Below are positions 32-25,089 of a stretch of 64,000 nt of DNA, piece by piece; within the stretch, counting starts at the first letter, position 1; every line of letters starts with the position of its first letter. The stretch is from Ylistrum balloti (taxonomy: Eukaryota). Position numbers and translations under genes: made by a program. The notes below the pieces were generated by a model, which ran no database searches, was not told the origin of the DNA, and was given only the letters and a program-made list of their open reading frames with translations. The stretch lies in the NCBI RefSeq assembly GCF_031769215.1, contig NW_026782189.1, positions 1 to 64,000 of the forward strand, in the 5' to 3' direction.

Positions 32-2828
32 ATGACGTCGCAGAAAAGCCCTCCAGAACAGCCAATCAAGGTTAGCTATACAGACAGACTTGACCCGATT
101 ACTTTGGCACGTTATAGAGAGAAAATTAAACTAGTAGACCATTTAGATCCGTATGAAGTGAAGAAAAGCGACTGGCGTTCAGATCCTGATGGTCTTCCAG
201 ATGTGACGTACCCAGACATCGTTAATTACTTGGTCCACACTCAGAGTGCCTACACATTGCAGGATTTGAAAGCTTACAAGTCCCTGGAATCCTACAACCA
301 GTTTGTTTGCGGTTGGGTGAAGGATGTCGGCCACATTTCATCGTTCGTTACGAAGAACATTCTGATGTCTGCAAAGGTGTGTAGTACTACTTACTGTACT
401 GTCCTGATCATAACTTATGCTTGATTTGATCGATTAATGGGGGCTTATAACGTCATTGTTCCGGTTATGACCGAGCCTAGAAATAATCAAAACTAAACCC
501 CCCCTACTGTAGGCTGCCCGTTTATAAATACGATCTTCAAACGACAATGTTTACACTGTCCTAGTAAAATGACCCACGTAAAGCGTAGGCATGAGTAACT
601 TGAGTTAACTGAACTTGACCAGATGTATAACATACTCTGTGTTATAACCGTAGATTATGCCAGAAGTTATAAATAAAAAATTGAGAAAAAATATTGTGAT
701 ATTAAGACTAGAATTCAGATGAAGTATAATGTTATAACAAAAAGTAGGCTTGATTGAATAGAATCTAGTGTTAAAGTATTTTCAATAAAGAAATTTTGGT
801 GGGCCTAGTATGAAAGGGTGCTAAATTATATAGGCCTATATAAAAAAAGCATTATCATAATATTTTAAACTTAATGAGTTTATCTATTTAATTTTGTCCT
901 CATACAAGTATGTAATGGACTGTGAGAAATACTGCAAATCTTTCATTTAATTAATTTTGTTTAATTACTTATTTATTATCTATCTATTTTTATTTTTTTT
1001 TTGGAGGGAGTTCTAGAGCAAGTCTTTCTTCTTATATCCCTGCCATAATTTTACCCATGGCCGTCATGTCGTGAAATCAAATTGATCCTCTTTTATTTCC
1101 TTTTTACTTTTAATTCACATGGGGCGGCGGCAGCATTCATATCTCAGACATTTTCTGTATTTTATTCTTGATGTATGAATTATCTGCCCTGAATATGAGG
1201 TAGCAGTGTGCTAGCTTAATTGAAAAATCAATATCCTGTTTTCATTTCAATATATCCTTTATATGAGTTTAATGTATTTGTTTTAGGTACGCCACTCCCA
1301 GAGGATGAATGAAGCGCCACTTCAACCATGGGTCATAGCCAATTCCGATGGAACAATTCTTGCTGCACACTGTACATGCATGGCTGGCTTGGGGGAAACC
1401 TGCACCCATGTTGGAGCATTGCTGTTCTGGATAGAGGCTGCAGTGAAGATCCGCAATTCTAAGACAGTGACACAGTCCCCTGCTTACTGGCTGCTTCCAT
1501 CAGGGATACAAAAGGTTACATACGATGAAGTCAGAGATATCGATTTCACCTCAGCCTCTACAAAAAAGTGCAGACTAGACGAGAGTATCACAACTCCACC
1601 AACTCCAACAACTCCAACCCTGAGGGCAGCTCGTAGGAATGATGTACCAACCCCTTCCAAAGATGAAGTGAATGGCTTCCTGCGGAGGTTACATGAGAGC
1701 CAGTCAAAGTCTGTATTGTTGTCTCTGATGCCAGGCTATGCTGAACACTTCAAACCTGCCTCACTGAGTGTACATCTTCCCAAAGTGCTCTCAGAGTTGT
1801 ACAATGAGGAGTATGTTGGAATGACTGAAGATGAACTTCACAACCAGTGTGACATCATCTTCGATGACATCATAGTAACAGCATCCCAGGCAGCAGCTGT
1901 GGAGGAGAGAACTCGCAGTCAGGCAAGCAGTAAAGATTGGTTTCGGTTCAGGAGTGGGAGAATCACTGCGTCCCGTCTTCATGCTGTTTGCCATACCAAT
2001 CCAGAGAAGCCATCGCTAAGTGTCATCAAGTCAGTTTGCTATCCAGAAAGTTTAAAATTTAGAAGCAAGGCCACAGACTGGGGATGTCAACATGAAAAAT
2101 CAGCCATTGATGCATACATCAAGAAAACAACAGCAGACCATCAAGACATGCATCACAGCAAGTGCGGACTTACAATTGATACCCGGTCCCCTTTCCTTGG
2201 AGCAACACCAGACCTCCTAGTTTCATGTGCCTGTTGTGGAAATGGATGTGTGGAGGTCAAGTGCCCATACAGCTGCAAAGGGAAGGACTTGTCTAATCTC
2301 AACAAGGACTTTTGCCTGGAGAAGATTGGAGATGATCTACGACTAAAGAGGAATCACCCATACTATTCCCAGGTTCAAGCTCAGATTTTCATTTGCGAGA
2401 AGGACTTTTGTGATTTTGTTGTATGGACACATAAAGCCATCCACATAGAGAGAATTCAGCCAGACTTGGACTTTTGGGAGGAAGCAAGGGGGAAAGCAGA
2501 GAAGTTTTTTAAAAGTGCTGTTCTTCCAGAGTTACTGTGTAAGCATTACTCTAAACCTGTACTTTCAACACAACTTCAGAAAGTTGAAACTGCCAACACA
2601 TTGACACCAACACCGACAGTGGATGCAAATGGTGATGATGAGACAATCTGCATTTGCAGAAAACCCTATGATGACACAGAGGATAGAGTTATTGGCTGTG
2701 ACAACCAGAACTGTTCCTATAAATGGCTTCACTTTAAATGTGTGAACTTAAAGCGTGCCCCAAGGAAGAATGCAGAATGGTTCTGTCCAGAATGCAGGAA
2801 GCTACCAGTCTTCAGCAGGAAAAAATAG
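32..2828 (+). CDS. Transposon accessory protein with SWIM zinc finger, YqaJ (lambda-exonuclease fold) domain and C-terminal PHD finger, about 628 aa
   Basis: Two exons, 32-376 and 1287-2828, joined by a GT-AG phase-0 intron (junction ...SAK|VRHSQRMNE). SWIM motif CTCMAGLGETCTH; YqaJ motifs RITAS, GATPD, VEVKCPY, YYSQVQAQ; PHD CICRK...IGCDNQNC..KWLHFKC...WFCPEC. Confidence 0.88.
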
Positions 2829-4565: not shown

Positions 4566-4761
4566 AGCTTGTTTTAATAAAAACAATTCAAAGCCATAAT
4601 AAATACTTGAAAATTAATTTATTGAAAATATATTAATATTTCCTCATGATTAACACTGGGATCATATACATTACATGGCAGTAATATTGAGTACAAAGGA
4701 CAGGTCTGCAGAAACAGAAACTACAAGTACCATCTATGTACATTTCGTGCTACGATTAATA

Positions 4762-5470
4762 CAGTCAAACCTGCTTTAGAGGACACCTGTCTATAAAGGA
4801 CAGTCTCAGGAACCCCAACAAGTTTTACTATATAATATACCTCTATATAGAGGACACTCTCTATAAAGGAGACTTAGAAATTCCCCCAAACACTATTTTC
4901 TATGTAAAATAACCTCTATTTAGAGGACAACAACATTTGAATATTCTGTGTACATGTAACTGTATCTAAATATATATATATCACTACAAGTGTTAGTTAT
5001 ATCATTTATAAGCACATTTTATAGTTTTCAAAGAAACAAGTAAACTCATAGATATGATAAAAATGAATGGTTTAAGTGTCATTGTTTACATATACACAAG
5101 AGAATTATCTAGTGTCAATGATTTGGAAGGGATGCTGTTGCTTTAAGTGTCTACAGACACAAATCATACACACTCATGTTCAAGAAAGGCTGATATTCAA
5201 CTTTTTGTTTTGATTGGTTATCATGTAGAAAAATACACAAAGTGGTTATCTTAATAACTAAACAAAGATGAGATTAAAATAAAATGTCATATAAAATATA
5301 TCAGGTTGTAGTAAGATTTCTCTTATACTTTAATACTTAATTAGGGACAGACAGGACTTATTTCTGAGAAAAACCTCTGTCTCCAAGTTTTGTATGGGTA
5401 TATAAAGGACACCTGTCTATAAGGGATACTTGTCATTTCCCCTCAGTGTCCTTTATACACAGTTTGACTG
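4762..5470. mobile_element. Tc1/mariner-pogo-type MITE (709 bp) with TA target duplication
   Basis: TA|CAGTCAAAC...GTTTGACTG|TA. Imperfect 25-bp TIRs (CAGTCAAAC N10 GGACAC at both ends); subterminal repeats AGGACACCTGTCTATAA near both ends; no ORF. Confidence 0.85.
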
Positions 5471-5697: not shown

Positions 5698-7868
5698 TCA
5701 ATCAAAATTCACAATAGAACCACACAAGTTGGTCAAACTACAGCAAACAGTAACAATTTTGTCTACAGCTGGAACATCTCCTGTGCGCGCAATCAAATAG
5801 TCTACAGGTAAAGTATCTGAAAGAATTGTAAACTTGTTCCTAACCAGTCCAATCACGCGTTCCACATGAATGCGGACATGTGCAATGTTTCTTGTGGATT
5901 CTACCTCAAGTGCTGACAACTGGCTCTTTCCTTTAGTAAAACTTGGTATTTTAACCTCCGCACACATTACACCGACACTTTCCTGAATGTCGAAACCACG
6001 GTCAGCAAGTACGATATCTCCTGGAAGAAGTTTCTTTAAAAAGCCACTGTTTTCCACAATATACTTGTCACTACTGCGTCCTCCCCAAGCATTTGACAGA
6101 TAGGTTATACATCCTTGAGGGGCTATTCCAATTAATATTTTTACAGTATTATGGTGTTTATACGAAGACCATGTCTTTGCTCTTGCAAGAAGATTTGAAG
6201 GCCGCTCAATAAAGATTTCAAAACAATCAATGATAACAGCGACTTTCAAGCCAAAATGCTTCCTGAATTCCATGGGCATTGAAAGTCTCAGTTCCTCTCT
6301 CTCTGGCCAGTAAACAAACTCTCGCAGTCTAATGTATAAAACGTCCAATACAGTTAGGAATGTCCTTGATGCGGTGGGCTGTGAGATATTGAAGATATAT
6401 CCAAGAAACTGAAGGGAGAGTGTAAGTCGCAGTTTCATCAGAGTCATAATAAATCTCTGAAACTTTGAGAATGTCACACGGCCGCTATCTGGAATGTAAT
6501 CTTTCACAAAGTCAAACACAGTCATCAAAGTTAAAAATCCTGGAAGCCCTGTGAAGCAGTTTACCTTCTTGTCATTGTCTCTGAATGCATCCTCACTGAA
6601 TATCTGCCCTTCCAGGATATGTTGCCTTAATGTAAGGTTTTCTGTTGTCCGCTCCTGACACTCTGCATTTAACTTCTTCAACAATTCTTCCTTTTCCTGA
6701 CTTCTAACCTCCATTAGGTCTTTCGCTGATTCTGCAGGGAAGAGAGGTCCTAATTTGAAGAAGTGAACAGGTTTGTCATCTTTCTGAAGCCAATCACACA
6801 CCTGTGGCTGACTGTCTTGGACACTACATGTGGATAAATCCATTAAAGCTCTGGCAGCTAAATGCTGTTTCCGCTTGTCATCACGTTGGTTTGCCCGTTG
6901 GAAACGCTCACTCTGGCTGCTTGGAGTTGTTGGAGATGTCAACTTCCTATTCAACTTCAATGAGGGGACCCAGTCAGGATTTGCTTTATCAAAAATCTTT
7001 GATGGTTTACCTGCAAAAAAAAAAGAAAAATCTTAAAAAAAGGAATGGGATTAAAAATAATGAACTGGTTACAGAACTAAATACTTTTTTTTTCATCACA
7101 CTATTTATAGTGAGACAGGCCTGATAGTGTATGTATGTTACATGTACTTGAAGTTGACCTGGTTTTTATATATGATAAAAGAGATAATATAAGGACATGT
7201 TATGATCAAAGTATATTATCACGGACTTATAAATATAGATATAAGTCCGTGGTATTATTGATATCTTTAAAAGAATGCATCTACTACATACGTTGTAGTT
7301 ATACAAGATCGTACGTAACTACTAGTCGGTACTAGGCCTAGAGCCTAAATAAAGATATAAGATTATTTCCGGTACAGGACTCGTATGTTGTTCGAAAGCA
7401 CCACTAGGAATAAATCACTTCGAGTGAAGTAAAACACGTCATATAAATATTGGATAAAACAATAAGTTCAGATTTACAGGTATTTGCACCAAATGCCATG
7501 TTACAAAACTATCGCATGCTGTACTGTACTGTACGGTGTCTCATTATAAATGTGATTCGCATTATTAGTGCACGTTTCCAAAACTCGTGTGACTTTAAAT
7601 ATTTTATGTAGCTAAGTAGTAAATGAAATCAATTGATGTCAGTTTATCTACCTTCTAAAAAATGATCCGAGCACACTTTAGAATGGGTTGATGGCACGAA
7701 GTCCTTTCTGCCTATGGCCGCGATCCATTTTGTTCTTCTCTCTCTGCTGAGTTCTTCTGTCCATTTGTCCTCGTGGAGTCTTACAGTAGGGAATCCATAA
7801 AAACCACGCTTTGTTCCCCTGTCGTTCGCCCGATTCGTACAGCCGTACACTACGCAGGTGTGAACCAT
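5698..7868 (-). CDS. Harbinger/ISL2EU transposase (THAP + HTH_Tnp_4 + DDE_Tnp_4), about 509 aa
   Basis: Exons 7868-7652 and 7010-5698, GT-AG phase-1 intron. THAP: [10 protein letters not shown]...W...VCSDHF|GKPS...NPDWVPSL. Catalytic triad motifs IIDCFE, LADRGF, HVERVIG. No stops or frameshifts. Confidence 0.92.
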
Positions 7869-8016
7869 CGTCTGTTTGTTTACCAATATATTCAAATGTG
7901 CTTCGCTCGAATGACTGATTATTATCGCTTGACCCACAATATGGCGGAGGTCGCAAGATGCCCGGATGTGTGACGTCATGGGAATTCTATCTATTCTTTA
8001 GTTTCGTATTTTGACT

Positions 8017-9171
8017 GCGGTTTGACGATTTACAGAATCGGGCAGGATCGGACAGAATTGGGCAGAATCGGACTAGAATAGTGCCGTTTTAATGATTTTT
8101 GTGAATTTCTTTTGCATTGATATCATCATATGTTACACATTGTGAAAGGTTTTTAAGGAAAAATGAAGACGCATTACATAAAACACTCATTTCTGATTTG
8201 GTCGCGCAAGACCGAAAGACGATTTACAGGATCGGGCAGAATCGCGGTAGAATGGGTCCTACTTAAACCAGCCCGCAGACGAGGAATCTTAAGCCCCGCC
8301 CACTTCCCGTGGTGTTAATATGAAGAACCATAGACATATAATATATGGAAGAACTTAGCACTGCTGTCGCCGGGATGAAAAAATACCTGTGCTGTATGAA
8401 TAACTGCATAAATATATATAAAATAAATGTTAAATAAATCAACTTGAAATACAATTATATTAAATAATTGTTAATATCAAATGAATATTGACCAGATAAT
8501 TGGCTTACAAAAATATACCATGACTCATCATGGCGGGCGGCGCTGCTAACACGCTGTTACGAGAGGAAAATCGTATCGCGTATAACTTTCTTAATCAGCG
8601 AGAAATCACTTCGAAATTTTACAGATGGGATTAATTAAGTAAAAATAACCATTATAAAACTTTATTTCTTAACTATCGTATCCACAACGCCTGCGGGCGT
8701 CTAAGTATACTTGCGGGCGTCTGCGGGCTGGTTTATGCGGTTAGACGATTTACAGAATCGGGCAGGATCGGGCAGAATCGGACTAGAATAGTGCCGTTTA
8801 AATGATTTTCGTGAATTTCTTTTGCATTGATGTCATCATATGTTACACATTATGAAAGTTTTTTAGGGAAAAATGAAGACGTATTACATAAAACACTCAT
8901 TTCTGGTTTGGTCGCGCAAGACCGAAAGACGATTTGCAGGATCGGGCAGAAACGGGCGGTTTATATGTAGAATTTGGACATTAAATTGTTTTTAGTGTAA
9001 TTATTGTGGTGTTAAATGATATCAGTTAAAACATCATAATTTCATATCGATCAACAACGGCCAAAAAAAGTATTATGTTCTTTTCACATAACGTAATGTG
9101 CCGCACTGGACCGAAAGACGATTTGCAGGATCGGGCAGAATCGGGCGGTTTATATGTAGAATTTGGACATT
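8017..9171 (+). repeat. Dispersed direct-repeat complex: a ~220-bp block twice and a 63-bp block twice
   Basis: 8017-8244 is nearly identical to 8737-8954. 8920-8982 equals 9109-9171 with one mismatch. Shared motif GACGATTTRCAGRATCGGGCAG occurs at least five times. Confidence 0.9.
8264..8735. mobile_element. Small non-coding TIR element (MITE-like)
   Basis: Perfect 18-bp inverted repeats TAAACCAGCCCGCAGACG (8264-8281) and CGTCTGCGGGCTGGTTTA (8718-8735). The outer TA may be a TSD. TGCGGGCGTCT is reiterated inside the right end. Confidence 0.7.
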
Positions 9172-9382
9172 GGTTGATTTGTAAATTCATAGGTTAATTA
9201 TAAAATATATCATAGAAAATTGATAATACCTTTTTGTGCTGTGTTAACAATTTTGGAAATCCCCCGCACCCCCACTATAGTAAAGAATAGTGACTATACA
9301 CTTGGTAATAATGTTGTCGGCAGCATGTGAAATAAGTCGGGGATGTTTCCCTTTCAGTTTTATTATTAAGTGATATAATGTA

Positions 9383-9502
9383 GAAAGCCATCTGCTACGG
9401 TGATAATGTCCTGATAATGCTGCTAATTAAGTAACATTATCAGGGATATCTCACCGCATTGCCCAGGTCTCGGGATCGTGGACCCTGCTTTCATGGAGAC
9501 CT
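9383..9502 (-). ncRNA. HDV-like (delta-like) self-cleaving ribozyme
   Basis: Minus-strand fold: P1 AGGUCUC(9502-9496)/GAGACCU(9471-9465); J1/2 CAU; P2 GAAAGCA(9492-9486)/UG[G]CUUUC(9390-9383); P3 GGG/CCC; L3 UCCACGAU; P1.1 CC/GG followed by GCAA; long P4 UGCGGUGA..CCUGAUAAUG/CAUUAUCAGG..UCACCGUA; J4/2 G-C-A-G-A with the catalytic-equivalent C at 9394. Confidence 0.85.
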
Positions 9503-9560
9503 TTTTGGGGGGGGTGGGGGTGTTTTTTTTTTTTTTTTTTTTTTTATTTTGTATTTATGT

Positions 9561-9899
9561 CTACCTGTACCCAAACAACACTCTACAAATATCATGATAA
9601 TACTTCGCTAGTCCTTTGTCATTGAAGTGGACAAGGTCTGTCGTATACATCGCTGGATACGGAATGTTCATTTTTACTACACTGTCCTTGAAAATCTTGA
9701 ATAGTTTCTTGTTCACTGACGACTGCTGGCGTTTGAAATGTTGCATGGATAAGCCACCCCTGAATTTACCCCGCGCTACAATTTCCTGAATTAGAACTGT
9801 CTTCACGCCTGACGCTTCAATAACATCTACTAAAAGCGAGTTGGCGCCATGATAAGAAGGTAGTCTGGTGGCTTGGTTTGAATTATCAACTAACAGCAC
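9561..9899 (-). pseudogene. C-terminal fragment resembling an SGNH/GDSL hydrolase
   Basis: 112-aa open frame with a block-V-like motif DLVHFNDKG.AKYY and an upstream VLIQEIVARG...VNKKL pattern. No N-terminal GDS block and no usable ATG at the start. The stop is followed by an AATAAA running into A23 (9545-9523). Confidence 0.45.
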
Positions 9900-14040: not shown

Positions 14041-15779
14041 GACGTGAGTATCCAGGTTTTGCTTTTTGTTTTCTTATTGTTTGACTTCACTCCAAAAGTT
14101 TTTTCCTTTTGATGAAAAATTTATTTATTTTCCAAAACTAATCACTATTTTTTCCCAATATATCATACAGTTATTAGGTTATTAATAATTTCTTAGGAAA
14201 AGGGAAATTTTTAAAAAATGTCCCTTGGTTTGCAGACTTTTCGGGAACGGTTTCTTTACATCATCACCGAGTGCATTAGTTTAAATGAAAGATTCATAAG
14301 GTCTTGTATCAAATTGACTTTCGGTCACTTAAGAACGATGAACTAGTCCATTAATTATCCTTCTTTCAACTGTAGGAGACAGTGGTTGCAGTGGTGGTTC
14401 ACCGCGAACGAGCGAGAAACTTGTGTATCCAGCACCTCTTCGATATGGAATGTATGAAGTCCTGGCCATTTCTGGTCGTCTAGGACGGTATCGATGGTGA
14501 TGGCGGTAACGATACCAGCTATTATCAGATAGAAATGGTGGCCGACCCAAACACTACCATAGCTAAAAAAAAAACGAGAGAAGAAACAGAAGCCTGACAA
14601 ACACGGCAGAAGGGTAAACAAAACTTGATAGAATTGGAAAACTAATACGGATAACCTCCCTTTGATTCTAATGTTTGTTCAGAGCATGTTTATAAATATT
14701 TTTTCTTACGATTTTTCCTGACTTAGATATTAAAGACTAGCATACAAAACAAAATACCAAAAATGAGGTATGGTGTATGCTTTTACTTCCGCGGTAGAAA
14801 AAAGTGGGTTTTTTATGATTTTTTTTTCGTTTTTGTCGCGGTTTGGTCGAATGAATGTGTGTATATACTATATCTTACTGCACTTATTTGTAACTGATTT
14901 AGATAACTAAAATGTTGCTAACAGACCAGTCCTTTTACAGGTATAACTAGACGGTATATTACACCCACAATGTAAACATATTTATGGTAGAACGTTATAT
15001 TGGGTTAATCAAACTTGATACGGAGGTTGTCGTCAATGAAGCTTTATATGCTTCCTGATCACACCGGCTTATTCTCCTCACTCATTCACTCCTCAGTTAT
15101 CTCTGCGTTAATCACCGTTTGTTTATATTCTCCATCGCTTCACCGATTTTAAAATACGGCTTATGAGTGTGTGTAGGGGGTGTTGTTGTTTGTTTTTTTT
15201 TCCTATTCTACTATTTTAAAACGTGACCAGCCATTTTTTCAAAGCTTTTGACACAGGCCATGATTGTGTTAAGATCTCTTCGTCAGAATTTTCTACTACT
15301 TCCGTGTTATTTATAACAACATCAGTATCACCGCTTTATAATATACTGGCAGCGTGAAAACATCAAAAACTGGAATGTTTGCTGGAAAAGAACAATGAAT
15401 CGGACTTTAGTCGGATTACAGGTGAGAATTATCACATCGCTGTGGATACGTTCTTCATAAACGCTGCTACACTTCCCCAGACTGACGATACGGCTACACC
15501 CCTCACCCTTCCACCAGTGACGCCTACCAAACGTTCTCACTCCAAAAAGTACAAAAAGAAAATGAAAATGGCTTCTTACGATGTAGACGTTTTGTAATGC
15601 GTTTCGTTGCTTAATTAACTGAAGTATGATATCAATGCAACTTTTTAATGTTAGAAACAGGAAAAATTGTAAACCTTCTGTACCACATATCAAATGCAGA
15701 TCTATCAATAATTAGAAAGTGCATTATAGATAATGTAAAATTAATGTAAATTTGAATTAATGTTATGACATTCTATATC

Positions 15780-17120: not shown

Positions 17121-17300
17121 GCTGTCAGTCCAACGTCTATCAATGATTGACAGGGCTACTTTCTCTAACAGACATTCTCGTGTGGCTATTCAATTGACAA
17201 TGGTAACGCCCATATAACGATGTCCGAGCACGGAAAGTTAATGGTTAGTTAGAGCATTTGTTAGCCTTTGACCAGGAAAAGACGTGCAAGTCTTGACAGT
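17121..17300 (+). promoter_or_regulatory. Cluster of TALE-homeodomain (Pbx/Meis-Prep) type sites upstream of the Olig-like gene
   Basis: Exact decamer TGATTGACAG at 17144-17153; CTGTCA at 17122; TTGACAG at 17293; TTGACA at 17194. Motif presence only. Confidence 0.35.
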
Positions 17301-17411: not shown

Positions 17412-18197
17412 ATGGAGTATTCTGGAACGAAATGTGTGCCCGAAAACTCTAACAAAACAGGAAACGATAGCAATCTCGACAACAGAGACAACGAAGAAAA
17501 TGGAGGGAAATATCAAGTTCTAGGAATTAGTGAAGACACGCCATACGAAGGACATTCTGAGGAGGAAATGAAAACTGACGATAACTATAGAGACAAGAAG
17601 GGGCTGTGCAGTTACAGAAATAACCTACAAGGTGACAAAAGTGACAGAAAATATCTCTCACCGAAGAGTCGGTGTGGTGAAGGTGTTAAGGAGATGCGAA
17701 ACACCATTAACAGGAGAGAACGACGAAGGATGCATCAGCTTAACATAGCTCTGGATGGCCTGCGAGATGTGATGCCCTCTGTTCACTCGTCGTCTGCTCG
17801 AAAACTCTCTAAAGTAGCCACACTGATGTCAGCCAAAAATTACATTCAAATGCTGGTCAAGTCTGTCCAAGAAATGCGCGTTTTACTGCACAAACTCGGT
17901 GGGTGGAGTGGGGCTTTCAGTAAAGGTGTGCCTTACTACCGTGGTCCTGTCGTGACGCCGCCGCAATTTTCCTCGCCATCACAAAGTTTCCTGGACACTC
18001 CGTCAACTCCAACGAGTCTTACTCCGTGTACTTACAGTTACAGCAGGGAGACGCCTGTTACTTCGACAATGAAGGTGAATATAATGTCACCGTTACACCA
18101 TCAGGAATATTGTCAACATGTGTATCATACCAACAGATCGCAAACTTTATCGGAACATTACTCACACAGAGCCAACTGTTTTCATTGTTATTATTGA
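17412..18197 (+). CDS. Olig-like: Olig/BHLHE22-family bHLH transcription factor, single coding exon, 261 aa
   Basis: bHLH RNTINRRERRRMHQLNIALDGLRDVMPSVHSSSARKLSKVATLMSAKNYIQML aligns with the Olig signature R..IN.RER.RMHDLN.A.D.LR.V.PYAH.PSVRKLSKIATLLLA.NYI.M. Confidence 0.88.
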   Translation: MEYSGTKCVPENSNKTGNDSNLDNRDNEENGGKYQVLGISEDTPYEGHSEEEMKTDDNYRDKKGLCSYRNNLQGDKSDRKYLSPKSRCGEGVKEMRNTINRRERRRMHQLNIALDGLRDVMPSVHSSSARKLSKVATLMSAKNYIQMLVKSVQEMRVLLHKLGGWSGAFSKGVPYYRGPVVTPPQFSSPSQSFLDTPSTPTSLTPCTYSYSRETPVTSTMKVNIMSPLHHQEYCQHVYHTNRSQTLSEHYSHRANCFHCYY

Positions 18198-23660: not shown

Positions 23661-25089
23661 CATTGCAATTATACGTCAGTATATTTTTTTCGTTAGCATA
23701 GTAATTCCTAGTTATCAATTTGAGAATATTTCCTTAGATTGAATTCAGTTTTCATGGCGTAGCGGATATTAACCCCATACACTAGTAACATTTGCTTAGC
23801 AGTATTTCGAAGCAGTTCGTCGTCGTGATTCGTGTAGGTGGATAGTTTTTACATTGTTCAGGTGACTGACTTAACGTTTGATGATAATGTAAAGCAGTAC
23901 ATGTATATGTATAAGAGACATAAGTAGTAAAAGCTATCTTTTATTGAAATGTTATATATTAGCAGTTGTGACGCTGTTAAATATAACATTAATTATCATT
24001 ATTCTACGAAGTATAATTTGTTGAAAGGCCATATTCAGATTCATCTATACAAATCATGGTTATGTGCTATATATTTCACTGTGGTAATGTGTGTGTCATT
24101 TGTTTTTTCTCGTGTTTTTTATTATTCAGCCCCTAATTAGAACAGATGACAAAGACTTCAGTAAATTTGTTTTTATGTCCTGCCCTAGTTATAACCTGTA
24201 GTATAAAGTCATTGGTTATTGTCGATTCTCAAGTGATATTCTGTGATAATTCAGTAATGTTGAATGTCCATCTGTCTTGTTTTCCTGATAAATCAGTCCA
24301 TGATAATCTCCTGATGTTGATATCGTGAAGTTACCAGTCAAAGTAGGATTGTTCATGTACCGGTCAGTGTGACAAAGACCGATCGCCAATTGAGAGAAAA
24401 GACGTACGGAGGGTCTAGTAATTGGTTAAGCACTTGATAGCCGACATTGCATGCCTTTTTAGCACGTCTATCACACTGGCTGCAGGTGTGGAGACAATGC
24501 TAGCTATAAGTGGTTTATTTAGTAAACTGTAAACATTGAAGCATTGGAGGAAATGAGAGATGGTGCTGAGGAGTTTCCCATAATACTGACAGGCGGGACA
24601 CTAGGGGGAGTACGCTATTTCACACAATATACCTCGAATTAATTAATACGAGTCCATGGAGTCTGCGTGGTCGGCTCCTGTTGCTAGGATTAGTGAAACG
24701 CTGACCTCCGTTACGCCCCTCACCACGCCCCATCCTCCATTTACAATACCCAATCTGTCCCTCCACACCTCACCACCGCTGTCATTGTTCGAGTAGTCAA
24801 TGAGTTTGAGAATACTGTAACATAATGACCAATCCTAACACTTGAGAGAGGTAGAGATATTACAAAACTGTTTTAACGTCTAAATATGATGTTACTTCCC
24901 GTCGTCTTTTTTTCTTTTCTTTTTTTTTATAAATGACAGAAATTGGGACACTGGAATCATCATTGTTTGGTTATCAAATCTCTCATTCGATATCAGATTT
25001 AGAAAGGTATAATCATGAATTTAGCAGTAATTGGAGCACTGAGGAAAATCACATGTTGTGATTTAACTCATTTGTCTATTAATATATAT

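What the first reader, a model, noticed from the sequence alone, without database searches (positions are those of the whole stretch)
9383..9502. Complete HDV-like self-cleaving ribozyme on the minus strand
Seen in sequence: every element of the nested double pseudoknot can be paired by hand: 7-bp P1 (A-U first pair), 3-nt J1/2, P2 (7 bp with one bulged G), P3 GGG/CCC, L3 UCCACGAU, P1.1 CC/GG, a long two-segment P4 and J4/2 GCAGA. Established: HDV genomic L3 is UCCUCGCU with a U20-G25 contact, P1.1 is followed by GCAA, and J4/2 carries the catalytic C followed by N-R-A; all of these are matched. Inference: the RNA self-cleaves 5' of A9502. No ORF or gene annotation would reveal it.
Basis: partly seen in the sequence, partly recalled or inferred. 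Interest (0 to 1): 0.88.

Follow-up and report, generated by a model that had tools for sequence, protein, structure and literature searches.

The report
HDV-like self-cleaving ribozyme in scallop
A 120-base stretch of a scallop genome has every hallmark of the well-known HDV-like self-cutting RNA family, and its core recurs in a marine metagenome contig, so it is a real but fairly ordinary new member whose activity and purpose here are untested.

Summary
On the minus strand, 9502-9383 folds into the complete HDV-type nested double pseudoknot. It has a 7-bp P1, a 7-bp P2 with one bulge, a GGG/CCC P3, and L3 UCCACGAU with the U and G of the reverse wobble. P1.1 is CC/GG, followed by GCAA, a 63-nt P4 hairpin, and GCAGA carrying the candidate catalytic C9394.

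It is not chance. A strict descriptor hits only this site in the window, against 0.007 hits per shuffled window. A marine metagenome contig (L045) carries the same core at 89-93% identity. Its P4 sequence is unrelated but still forms a hairpin, and its flanks are unrelated.

No Rfam model detects it, and I found no paralogue in the window. The window is the start of a Ylistrum balloti (scallop) contig.

- The ribozyme is intergenic.
- It lies just after the poly(A) of a 5'-truncated esterase retrocopy.
- It lies 1.5 kb upstream, on the same strand, of a THAP-Harbinger transposase gene.
- No reverse transcriptase is nearby.
- It is absent from the part of the syntenic Mizuhopecten locus that I could examine.

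This copy has A1-U37 where L045 has the usual G1.U37. That change cripples CPEB3 ribozymes, so activity may be weak. Verdict: a new member of a known kind, of moderate interest.

The parts
9496..9502 (-). P1 5' strand (AGGUCUC). The predicted cleavage is 5' of A9502, between 9503 and 9502.
   Evidence: Pairs fully with 9471-9465. The minimum-energy fold recovers it.
9493..9495 (-). J1/2 (CAU).
   Evidence: Unpaired linker. It is AA in the homologue L045.
9486..9492 (-). P2 5' strand (GAAAGCA).
   Evidence: Pairs with 9390-9383. Duplex energy is -7.0 kcal/mol. It is identical in L045.
9483..9485 (-). P3 5' strand (GGG).
   Evidence: Three G-C pairs with 9474-9472.
9475..9482 (-). L3 (UCCACGAU). 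U9482 and G9477 are the reverse-wobble positions; C9481 and C9480 form P1.1.
   Evidence: Identical in L045. It matches HDV genomic L3 (UCCUCGCU) at 6 of 8 positions.
9472..9474 (-). P3 3' strand (CCC).
9465..9471 (-). P1 3' strand (GAGACCU).
9463..9464 (-). P1.1 3' strand (GG).
   Evidence: Pairs with C9481 and C9480.
9459..9462 (-). J1.1/4 (GCAA).
   Evidence: The same four bases occur in the HDV genomic ribozyme and in L045.
9396..9458 (-). P4, a 63-nt hairpin: 8 bp, an internal loop, then a 12-bp helix.
   Evidence: Folds at -28.6 kcal/mol on its own. In L045 the sequence is unrelated (52% identity, the shuffled baseline) but still forms a hairpin closing at the same junctions.
9391..9395 (-). 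J4/2 (GCAGA), with the candidate catalytic cytosine C9394.
   Evidence: Its position matches C75 of HDV. It is identical in L045.
9383..9390 (-). P2 3' strand (UGGCUUUC), with one bulged G (9389 or 9388).
   Evidence: L045 has a bulged C at the same place.
9503..9522 (-). Leader just upstream of the cleavage site: CACCCCCACCCCCCCC followed by AAAA.
   Evidence: In folds that include the leader, the C-run pairs with U37-G40.
9523..9545 (-). A23 tract preceded by an AAUAAA-like signal: the poly(A) tail of the upstream retrocopy.
   Evidence: Read directly from the sequence.
9561..9899 (-). 5'-truncated SGNH/GDSL esterase ORF, covering the C-terminal half of a family of about 176 aa. It is a neighbour, probably not part of the ribozyme unit.
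   Evidence: Residues 23-111 of the query align to about 85-175 of 176-aa proteins that hit Pfam Lipase_GDSL_2.
5698..7979 (-). THAP + HTH_Tnp_4 + DDE_Tnp_4 (Harbinger-type) transposase gene in two exons, downstream on the same strand. It is a neighbour.
   Evidence: Pfam hits. It is 100% identical to Ylistrum balloti LOC132551957.

Best explanation
This is a genuine member, by sequence and fold, of the HDV-like self-cleaving ribozyme family, present as a solitary copy in an intergenic region of the scallop Ylistrum balloti.

When the minus strand is transcribed, the RNA should fold into the nested double pseudoknot. P1, P1.1 and P4 stack as one column, and P2 and P3 as the other. C9394 in J4/2 would act as general acid, and a Mg2+ ion would be held near the L3 U.G reverse wobble. 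The RNA would then cut itself between A9503 and A9502. The upstream piece would end in a 2',3'-cyclic phosphate, and the downstream RNA would begin with a 5'-OH at A9502.

The fold and the homology are shown here. The chemistry is inferred from the family.

The copy most likely arrived with a mobile element, as most animal HDV-like ribozymes do, and now sits among transposon debris. Its A1-U37 cleavage-site pair suggests a slowed or partly disabled copy.
For: - All helices and junctions are present at the stated coordinates.
- The fold energy has z = -4.85.
- It is the only strict-descriptor hit in the window, against 0.007 per shuffled window.
- A metagenome scan with 17 fixed bases returned 66 loci. 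One of them, L045, also shares P1, P2, J4/2 and the P2 bulge position.
- Against L045, identity is 89% over the 5' core and 93% over J4/2 plus P2. Identity in P4 and in 100-nt flanks is at the shuffled baseline, and P4 is still a hairpin.
- That pattern, with a conserved catalytic core and a free P4, is what is described for R2 and other HDV-like ribozymes (PMC3774820).
- As a control, 27 chance matches to the P1/P2 strings in prokaryote genomes have no P3, L3 or GCAA.
- The mobile origin is supported by three observations. Flanks are unrelated between the two copies. The ribozyme is absent from the examined part of the syntenic Mizuhopecten yessoensis locus. The neighbours are transposon and retrocopy sequences.
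Against: - No Rfam family matches, even at E up to 10 on the 130-nt stretch.
- Only two family members were found, and there are no two-sided compensatory changes in P1, P2 or P3. The comparative support rests on the conservation pattern and on P4.
- L045 itself has a C.A mismatch at the seventh P1 pair and an A.C mismatch in P3, and it does not fold well. It may be decayed.
- This copy has A1-U37 and A at -1 (PMC8233481, PMC1874588).
- No reverse transcriptase or other retroelement body lies downstream. The 9.4 kb to the contig end hold only local repeats and a DNA-transposon gene pair.
- No target-site duplication was found.
Confidence: 0.75

Rival explanations
1. It is an inactive relic. 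The sequence descends from an HDV-like ribozyme, but this copy no longer cleaves at a useful rate. The causes would be the G1-to-A change at the cleavage site, an unfavourable A at -1, and leader pairing with the P1.1 guanines.
For: - L045 keeps G1.U37 while the window has A1-U37.
- All CPEB3 sequences with G1A have very low activity, and rat falls from 92% to 3% (PMC8233481).
- The -1 preference in HDV is U > C > A > G (PMC1874588).
- The leader C-run pairs with U37-G40 in minimum-energy folds.
- The copy sits among decayed mobile-element fragments, and no other HDV-type note exists among the 759 windows of this genome with notes so far.
Against: - All five helices, the L3 wobble bases, GCAA and the J4/2 C are intact. 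That is unexpected for an old neutral relic.
- L1TcRz is active with a Watson-Crick C1 first pair (PMC3185411).
- Active R2 ribozymes tolerate P1 and P3 mismatches (PMC3774820).
Confidence: 0.35
2. The ribozyme serves the downstream THAP-Harbinger transposase gene. It would trim read-through transcripts to give the transposase mRNA a defined 5' end, as HDV-like ribozymes do for non-LTR retrotransposons.
For: It is on the same strand, 1.5 kb upstream of the THAP exon, and no annotated gene lies between them.
Against: - Paralogous THAP-DDE loci in Y. balloti (L100) and Pecten maximus (L101) have no such motif within 6 kb upstream.
- No terminal inverted repeats place the ribozyme inside the element.
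- The closest copy, L098 (84% identity), has too little upstream sequence to test.
Confidence: 0.06
3. The esterase ORF, A23 tract, C-run and ribozyme form one cassette. The ribozyme would cut just after an encoded poly(A) to make a 3' end.
For: The ribozyme begins 20 nt after the A23 tract, on the same strand. An earlier scan note (s1-229079) raised this idea.
Against: - The ORF is only the C-terminal half of a 176-aa esterase family and has no proper start, so it is a truncated retrocopy.
- Related esterase genes (L067-L070) have neither a poly(A) nor a ribozyme downstream.
- L045 has the ribozyme without any such ORF.
Confidence: 0.03
4. It is a chance look-alike with no ribozyme ancestry.
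For: - Loose HDV descriptors give many false hits.
- The strict descriptor gave one false hit in 0.65 Mb of unrelated DNA.
- No Rfam model scores it.
Against: - The L045 homologue shares the functional segments and nothing else.
- The exact GCAA and GCAGA junctions and a P4 flush with them make the combined chance estimate negligible.
Confidence: 0.02

Closest known systems
HDV genomic ribozyme (the family archetype)
   Same: The topology is the same, with a 7-bp P1, a 3-bp P3 and a 2-bp CC/GG P1.1. L3 matches at 6 of 8 bases, including the U and G of the reverse wobble. GCAA follows P1.1. A G-C pair precedes the purine-rich J4/2. An A-U pair of P2 abuts P3.
   Different: The first pair is A1-U37 instead of G1.U37. 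P2 has a one-base bulge. P4 is a 63-nt two-segment hairpin. The sequence is encoded in animal DNA, not in a circular RNA agent, and there is no delta-antigen ORF nearby.
[quoted passage not shown]
   Same: It is an animal genomic copy with a conserved catalytic core and a freely varying P4. It occurs with unrelated flanks in two genomes, as expected of a mobile-element passenger.
   Different: No reverse transcriptase, endonuclease or element body follows it in the 9.4 kb to the contig end. No target-site duplication was found. It appears to be low-copy.
CPEB3 intronic ribozyme of mammals (PMC8233481)
   Same: It is a single-copy cellular HDV-like ribozyme. Natural G1A variants exist in CPEB3 and are weak.
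   Different: It is not inside an annotated gene, and it is not conserved at the syntenic locus of another scallop.

Membership tests
HDV-like self-cleaving ribozymes | Nested double pseudoknot with P1 (6-7 bp), P1.1 (1-2 bp), P2 (at least 5 bp), P3 (3 bp) and an optional P4, in the canonical order. | tested here: met
   All helices were paired explicitly. P1, P3 and P4 also appear in the unconstrained minimum-energy fold. The P2 duplex energy is -7.0 kcal/mol.
HDV-like self-cleaving ribozymes | A cytosine in J4/2, directly after P4, in the position of C75. | tested here: met
   C9394 in GCAGA is conserved in L045. Its catalytic role was not tested.
HDV-like self-cleaving ribozymes | L3 carrying the U and G of the reverse wobble and the two pyrimidines that form P1.1. 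| tested here: met
   L3 is UCCACGAU, with U9482, G9477, and C9481 and C9480 pairing G9464 and G9463.
HDV-like self-cleaving ribozymes | A G.U wobble as the first pair of P1. This is usual but not universal. | tested here: not met
   The window has A1-U37, while L045 has G1.U37. L1TcRz is active with C1 (PMC3185411), so I treat this as a risk to activity and not as an exclusion.
HDV-like self-cleaving ribozymes | Mg2+-dependent self-scission at the 5' end of P1, giving 5'-OH and 2',3'-cyclic phosphate ends. | not testable with these tools
   This needs transcription and cleavage assays, or sequencing of RNA ends.
HDV-like self-cleaving ribozymes | Pairing is maintained across homologues while sequence changes. 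| tested here: inconclusive
   Only one homologue is available. P4 is replaced wholesale and stays helical. The first pair changes A-U to G.U. Two pairs are broken in L045, and there is no two-sided compensation in P1 to P3.
Rfam HDV-type families (covariance models) | A score at or above a family's gathering threshold. | tested here: not met
   There were no hits at gathering thresholds in the window. No HDV-type family appeared at E up to 10 on 500 nt or 130 nt. From my own knowledge, these models cover narrow subgroups and cannot encode the pseudoknots.
Retrotransposon 5'-end ribozymes (R2, RTE, L1Tc type) | The ribozyme lies at the 5' end of an element encoding reverse transcriptase, or of its non-autonomous derivative. 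| tested here: not met
   Only three ORFs of 150 aa or more occur in the 64 kb, and none is an RT. No target-site duplication was found. The contig ends 9.4 kb downstream, so an interrupted element cannot be excluded.

The most novel reading that the evidence does not exclude
The ribozyme is not retrotransposon debris but a working part of something new. One possibility is a 5'-end processing device for the THAP-Harbinger/YqaJ DNA transposon that lies directly downstream on the same strand. The other is a free-standing ribozyme kept by selection in marine invertebrates, given that its core is 89-93% identical in an unrelated metagenome contig while everything around it has diverged.
Probability: 0.07. 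Interest if true: 0.7.

Novelty: new member of a known kind. Interest (0 to 1): 0.38.

Why it matters
HDV-like ribozymes are known from deltaviruses, mammals (CPEB3), insects, nematodes, sea urchins, lancelets, trypanosomes and bacteria, mostly tied to retrotransposons. This one adds a bivalve example that current Rfam models miss. It has a recognisable relative in marine metagenome data and no visible retrotransposon partner.

It offers a natural A1-U37 versus G1.U37 pair of variants for testing the role of the cleavage-site base pair. It is also a seed for a covariance model that could reveal how common this subfamily is in molluscs. By itself it does not change what is known about the family.

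Tried and rejected
- **Rfam.** I ran it at gathering thresholds on the whole window, and at E up to 10 on 500 nt and on 130 nt. No HDV-type family appeared. The hits were weak miRNA-like matches to the P4 hairpin plus other sub-threshold noise hits.
- **Paralogues in the window.** A pattern search with 3 mismatches and a self-BLAST found none.
- **Viral contigs.** Two patterns gave nothing.
- **Prokaryote genomes.** The 27 matches to the P1/P2 strings were all chance.
- **Literature.** A search for the L3-P3 string returned only unrelated primers.
- **The esterase route.** Relatives exist, but their loci carry no ribozyme. A word-indexed search found no close copies.
- **The transposase route.** Paralogous loci have no ribozyme.
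- **The syntenic Mizuhopecten locus.** It aligns at conserved blocks but not around the ribozyme.
- **Target-site duplications and terminal inverted repeats.** None were found.
- **tRNA or SINE head.** None was found.
- **A loosened descriptor.** It was useless, with many false hits.
- **Papers not held.** Cerrone-Szakal 2008, Webb 2009 and Ruminski 2011 are not in the library. The effect of A1-U37 in HDV itself therefore could not be cited.
- **Covariance model.** I did not build one. Two sequences, one of them misaligned by MAFFT at the 5' end, would add nothing beyond BLAST on the few loci held.

Full report
**What is in the sequence.** Read on the minus strand from 9502 down to 9383, the 120 nt contain every element of the HDV-type nested double pseudoknot.

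- P1: AGGUCUC (9502-9496) pairs with GAGACCU (9471-9465), seven Watson-Crick pairs.
- J1/2: CAU.
- P2: GAAAGCA (9492-9486) pairs with UGGCUUUC (9390-9383), seven pairs around one bulged G.
- P3: GGG (9485-9483) pairs with CCC (9474-9472).
- L3: UCCACGAU (9482-9475).
- P1.1: the two L3 cytosines pair with G9464 and G9463.
- J1.1/4: GCAA follows P1.1.
- P4: a 63-nt hairpin (9458-9396) of 8 bp, an internal loop and a 12-bp helix.
- J4/2: GCAGA (9395-9391), which places C9394 where HDV has C75.

The unconstrained minimum-energy fold recovers P1, P3 and P4. It scores -43.3 kcal/mol against -28.4 +/- 3.1 for shuffles, z = -4.85. The HDV genomic segment used for comparison is the one widely printed for that ribozyme.

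**Is it more than chance?** I wrote a strict descriptor requiring a 7-bp P1, a 3-bp P3, an L3 starting UCC, GG for P1.1, a P2 of at least 5 bp, and a C in J4/2. It finds exactly this site in both strands of the window. In 150 dinucleotide shuffles it finds 0.02 cores and 0.007 full motifs per window.

On 0.65 Mb of unrelated fetched DNA it gave one false hit, inside an actinobacterial coding region. A loosened version gives many false hits. A descriptor hit alone would therefore not be convincing across a scan of this size.

Several features are not in the descriptor: the exact GCAA, a G-C pair before the purine-rich J4/2, a P4 helix flush with both junctions, and G at the L3 wobble position. 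By my rough multiplication these bring the chance expectation below 1e-9 per window.

**A homologue.** I scanned the metagenome contigs for TCCACGATCCC, seven free bases, then GGGCAA. This returned 66 loci, about the number expected by chance. In 65 of them nothing else fits.

One contig, L045 (a 3.2-kb JGI contig), also has GGUCUC, GAAAGCA, AGACCU, GCAGA and GCUUUC in the right order. BLAST of the whole window against L045 aligns only these two pieces.

Measured directly:

| Segment | Identity, window vs L045 | Shuffled baseline |
|---|---|---|
| 5' core | 89% | not computed |
| J4/2 plus P2 3' strand | 93% | not computed |
| P4 | 52% | 51% |
| 100 nt upstream | 44% | 52% |
| 100 nt downstream | 56% | 59% |

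The unrelated P4 of L045 still folds as a hairpin closing exactly between GCAA and GCAGA. The P2 3' strand has a one-base bulge at the same place in both copies (G here, C there).

A conserved catalytic core with a freely evolving P4 is what has been described for R2 and other HDV-like ribozymes (PMC3774820). Identical P1 and P2 sequences indicate common descent, not convergence.

As a control, 27 matches to the P1/P2 strings in prokaryote genomes show none of the P3, L3 or GCAA features.

**Limits of the comparative evidence.** There are only two members. Within P1 to P3 the differences are as follows: A1-U37 here versus G1.U37 in L045, a C.A mismatch at the seventh P1 pair of L045, and an A.C mismatch in the middle of its P3. 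There is no two-sided compensatory change. L045 does not fold convincingly on its own (z = -0.48).

No Rfam family detects the window sequence at any threshold tried. From my own knowledge, the Rfam HDV-type models cover narrow subgroups and cannot represent pseudoknots. I therefore read this as "not a close relative of a curated subgroup" and not as evidence against the fold.

**Would this copy cleave?** The helices and the core bases known to matter are intact, but three features argue for reduced activity.

- The cleavage-site pair is A-U. In mammalian CPEB3 ribozymes, G1A accounts for most cases of lost activity, and in rat it alone drops cleavage from 92% to 3% (PMC8233481).
- The -1 base is A, and HDV prefers U > C > A > G (PMC1874588).
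- With the native leader included, the upstream C-run pairs with U37-G40. This displaces the A1-U37 pair and occupies the P1.1 guanines.

On the other side, L1TcRz cleaves at a C1 that forms a Watson-Crick pair (PMC3185411). Active R2 ribozymes tolerate P1 and even P3 mismatches (PMC3774820). I put the chance that this copy is effectively dead at about one in three.

**Where it sits.** The 420-aa ORF at 6960-5698 is 100% identical to Ylistrum balloti LOC132551957. The window is the first 64 kb of contig JAUZWB010000507.1 of that scallop assembly.

The only annotated genes nearby are this THAP + HTH_Tnp_4 + DDE_Tnp_4 transposase (minus strand) and a bHLH gene starting at 17412 on the plus strand. 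The ribozyme is therefore intergenic.

Immediately upstream on the same strand lies the C-terminal half of a 176-aa SGNH/GDSL esterase family. It is followed by its stop codon, an AAUAAA-like signal, 23 A (9545-9523), a C-run and AAAA. This looks like a 5'-truncated, polyadenylated retrocopy.

Downstream there are local repeats (8016-9171) and then the transposase gene. No ORF in the window resembles a reverse transcriptase. No tRNA-like head is present. No target-site duplication or terminal inverted repeats were found.

**Tests of linkage to the neighbours.**

- Loci of related esterase genes (L067-L070) have no ribozyme and no poly(A) after the ORF. L045 has the ribozyme without any esterase ORF. 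The esterase, poly(A) and ribozyme "cassette" raised by an earlier scan note is therefore probably a juxtaposition.
- Paralogous THAP-DDE loci in Y. balloti and Pecten maximus have no HDV-like motif within 6 kb upstream. This argues against a role in the transposon. The closest copy (84% identity, L098) is too short to test.
- The orthologous bHLH locus of Mizuhopecten yessoensis (L102) aligns collinearly with the window at 14373-14620, 15384-15578, 17129-17176, the coding region, and 24355-24776. Nothing between 7 and 14.3 kb of the window aligns reliably, and no ribozyme match exists anywhere in L102. The ribozyme is thus not a conserved syntenic element like CPEB3. A lineage-specific insertion is the simplest reading.

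**Conclusion.** The claim of self-cleavage is a reasonable inference that remains untested and is weakened by the A1-U37 pair.

The most likely history is a ribozyme carried by a mobile element, now a solitary copy in transposon-rich intergenic DNA. The evidence does not exclude a role in processing the downstream transposase transcript, nor a selected free-standing ribozyme, but I rate these as unlikely.

This is a new member of a well-known kind. It is useful as a seed for finding the subfamily in molluscs and is not otherwise surprising.

The scan had noted this same stretch once before (s1-229079). I found no other HDV-type note for this genome.

Noticed in passing
window 5698-7979 (-) and 1305-2828 (+); also L100 and an ENA contig: A THAP-HTH_Tnp_4-DDE_Tnp_4 (Harbinger-type) transposase gene is followed by a convergent YqaJ-exonuclease gene, which here also has a PHD finger. 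The same pairing appears in the window, in a second Y. balloti locus, and in an unrelated 2-Mb ENA contig. This suggests a conserved two-gene mobile element.
   Followed up: partly
window 9394-9460 (-): The P4 hairpin gives a sub-threshold Rfam match to the mir-190 precursor (28.3 bits, gathering 48, E = 7e-4 for a 130-nt search). It gives weaker matches to other miRNA families on both strands. This is probably just a generic long hairpin, and P4 is not conserved in L045.
   Followed up: no
window 14373-14620, 15384-15578, 17129-17176, 24355-24776 versus L102: There are collinear conserved blocks (75-88% nucleotide identity in those that BLASTN aligned; 15384-15578 was seen only by TBLASTX) around the bHLH (Olig/e22-23-like) gene between Ylistrum balloti and Mizuhopecten yessoensis. 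They are likely regulatory elements or unannotated exons. In M. yessoensis an annotated 393-aa gene overlaps two of them.
   Followed up: no
window 8016-9171 (+): Five same-orientation copies of a 22-nt motif (GACGATTTRCAGRATCGGGCAG) lie within 190- and 710-bp local repeats, between the ribozyme and the THAP exon. They could be transposase-binding subterminal repeats.
   Followed up: partly
L070 854-2560 (+): In a Logan contig, a full-length relative of the esterase is followed by an ORF of at least 569 aa with no Pfam match. This does not fit the expected esterase-ORF1 plus APE/RT-ORF2 layout.
   Followed up: no
L097, minus strand, about 4666-4785 of the reverse complement: The strict HDV descriptor also hit an actinobacterial MAG whose P1 is GGCCGGC, identical to HDV. 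It lies in what appears to be a PP2C/SpoIIE-type coding region and lacks the L3 G, so I took it as a false positive.
   Followed up: partly
window 9513-9520 and 9268-9275 (-): ACCCCCAC upstream of the ribozyme is perfectly complementary to GUGGGGGU about 110 nt downstream of it. L045 also has G-runs downstream of its ribozyme. The significance is unknown.
   Followed up: no
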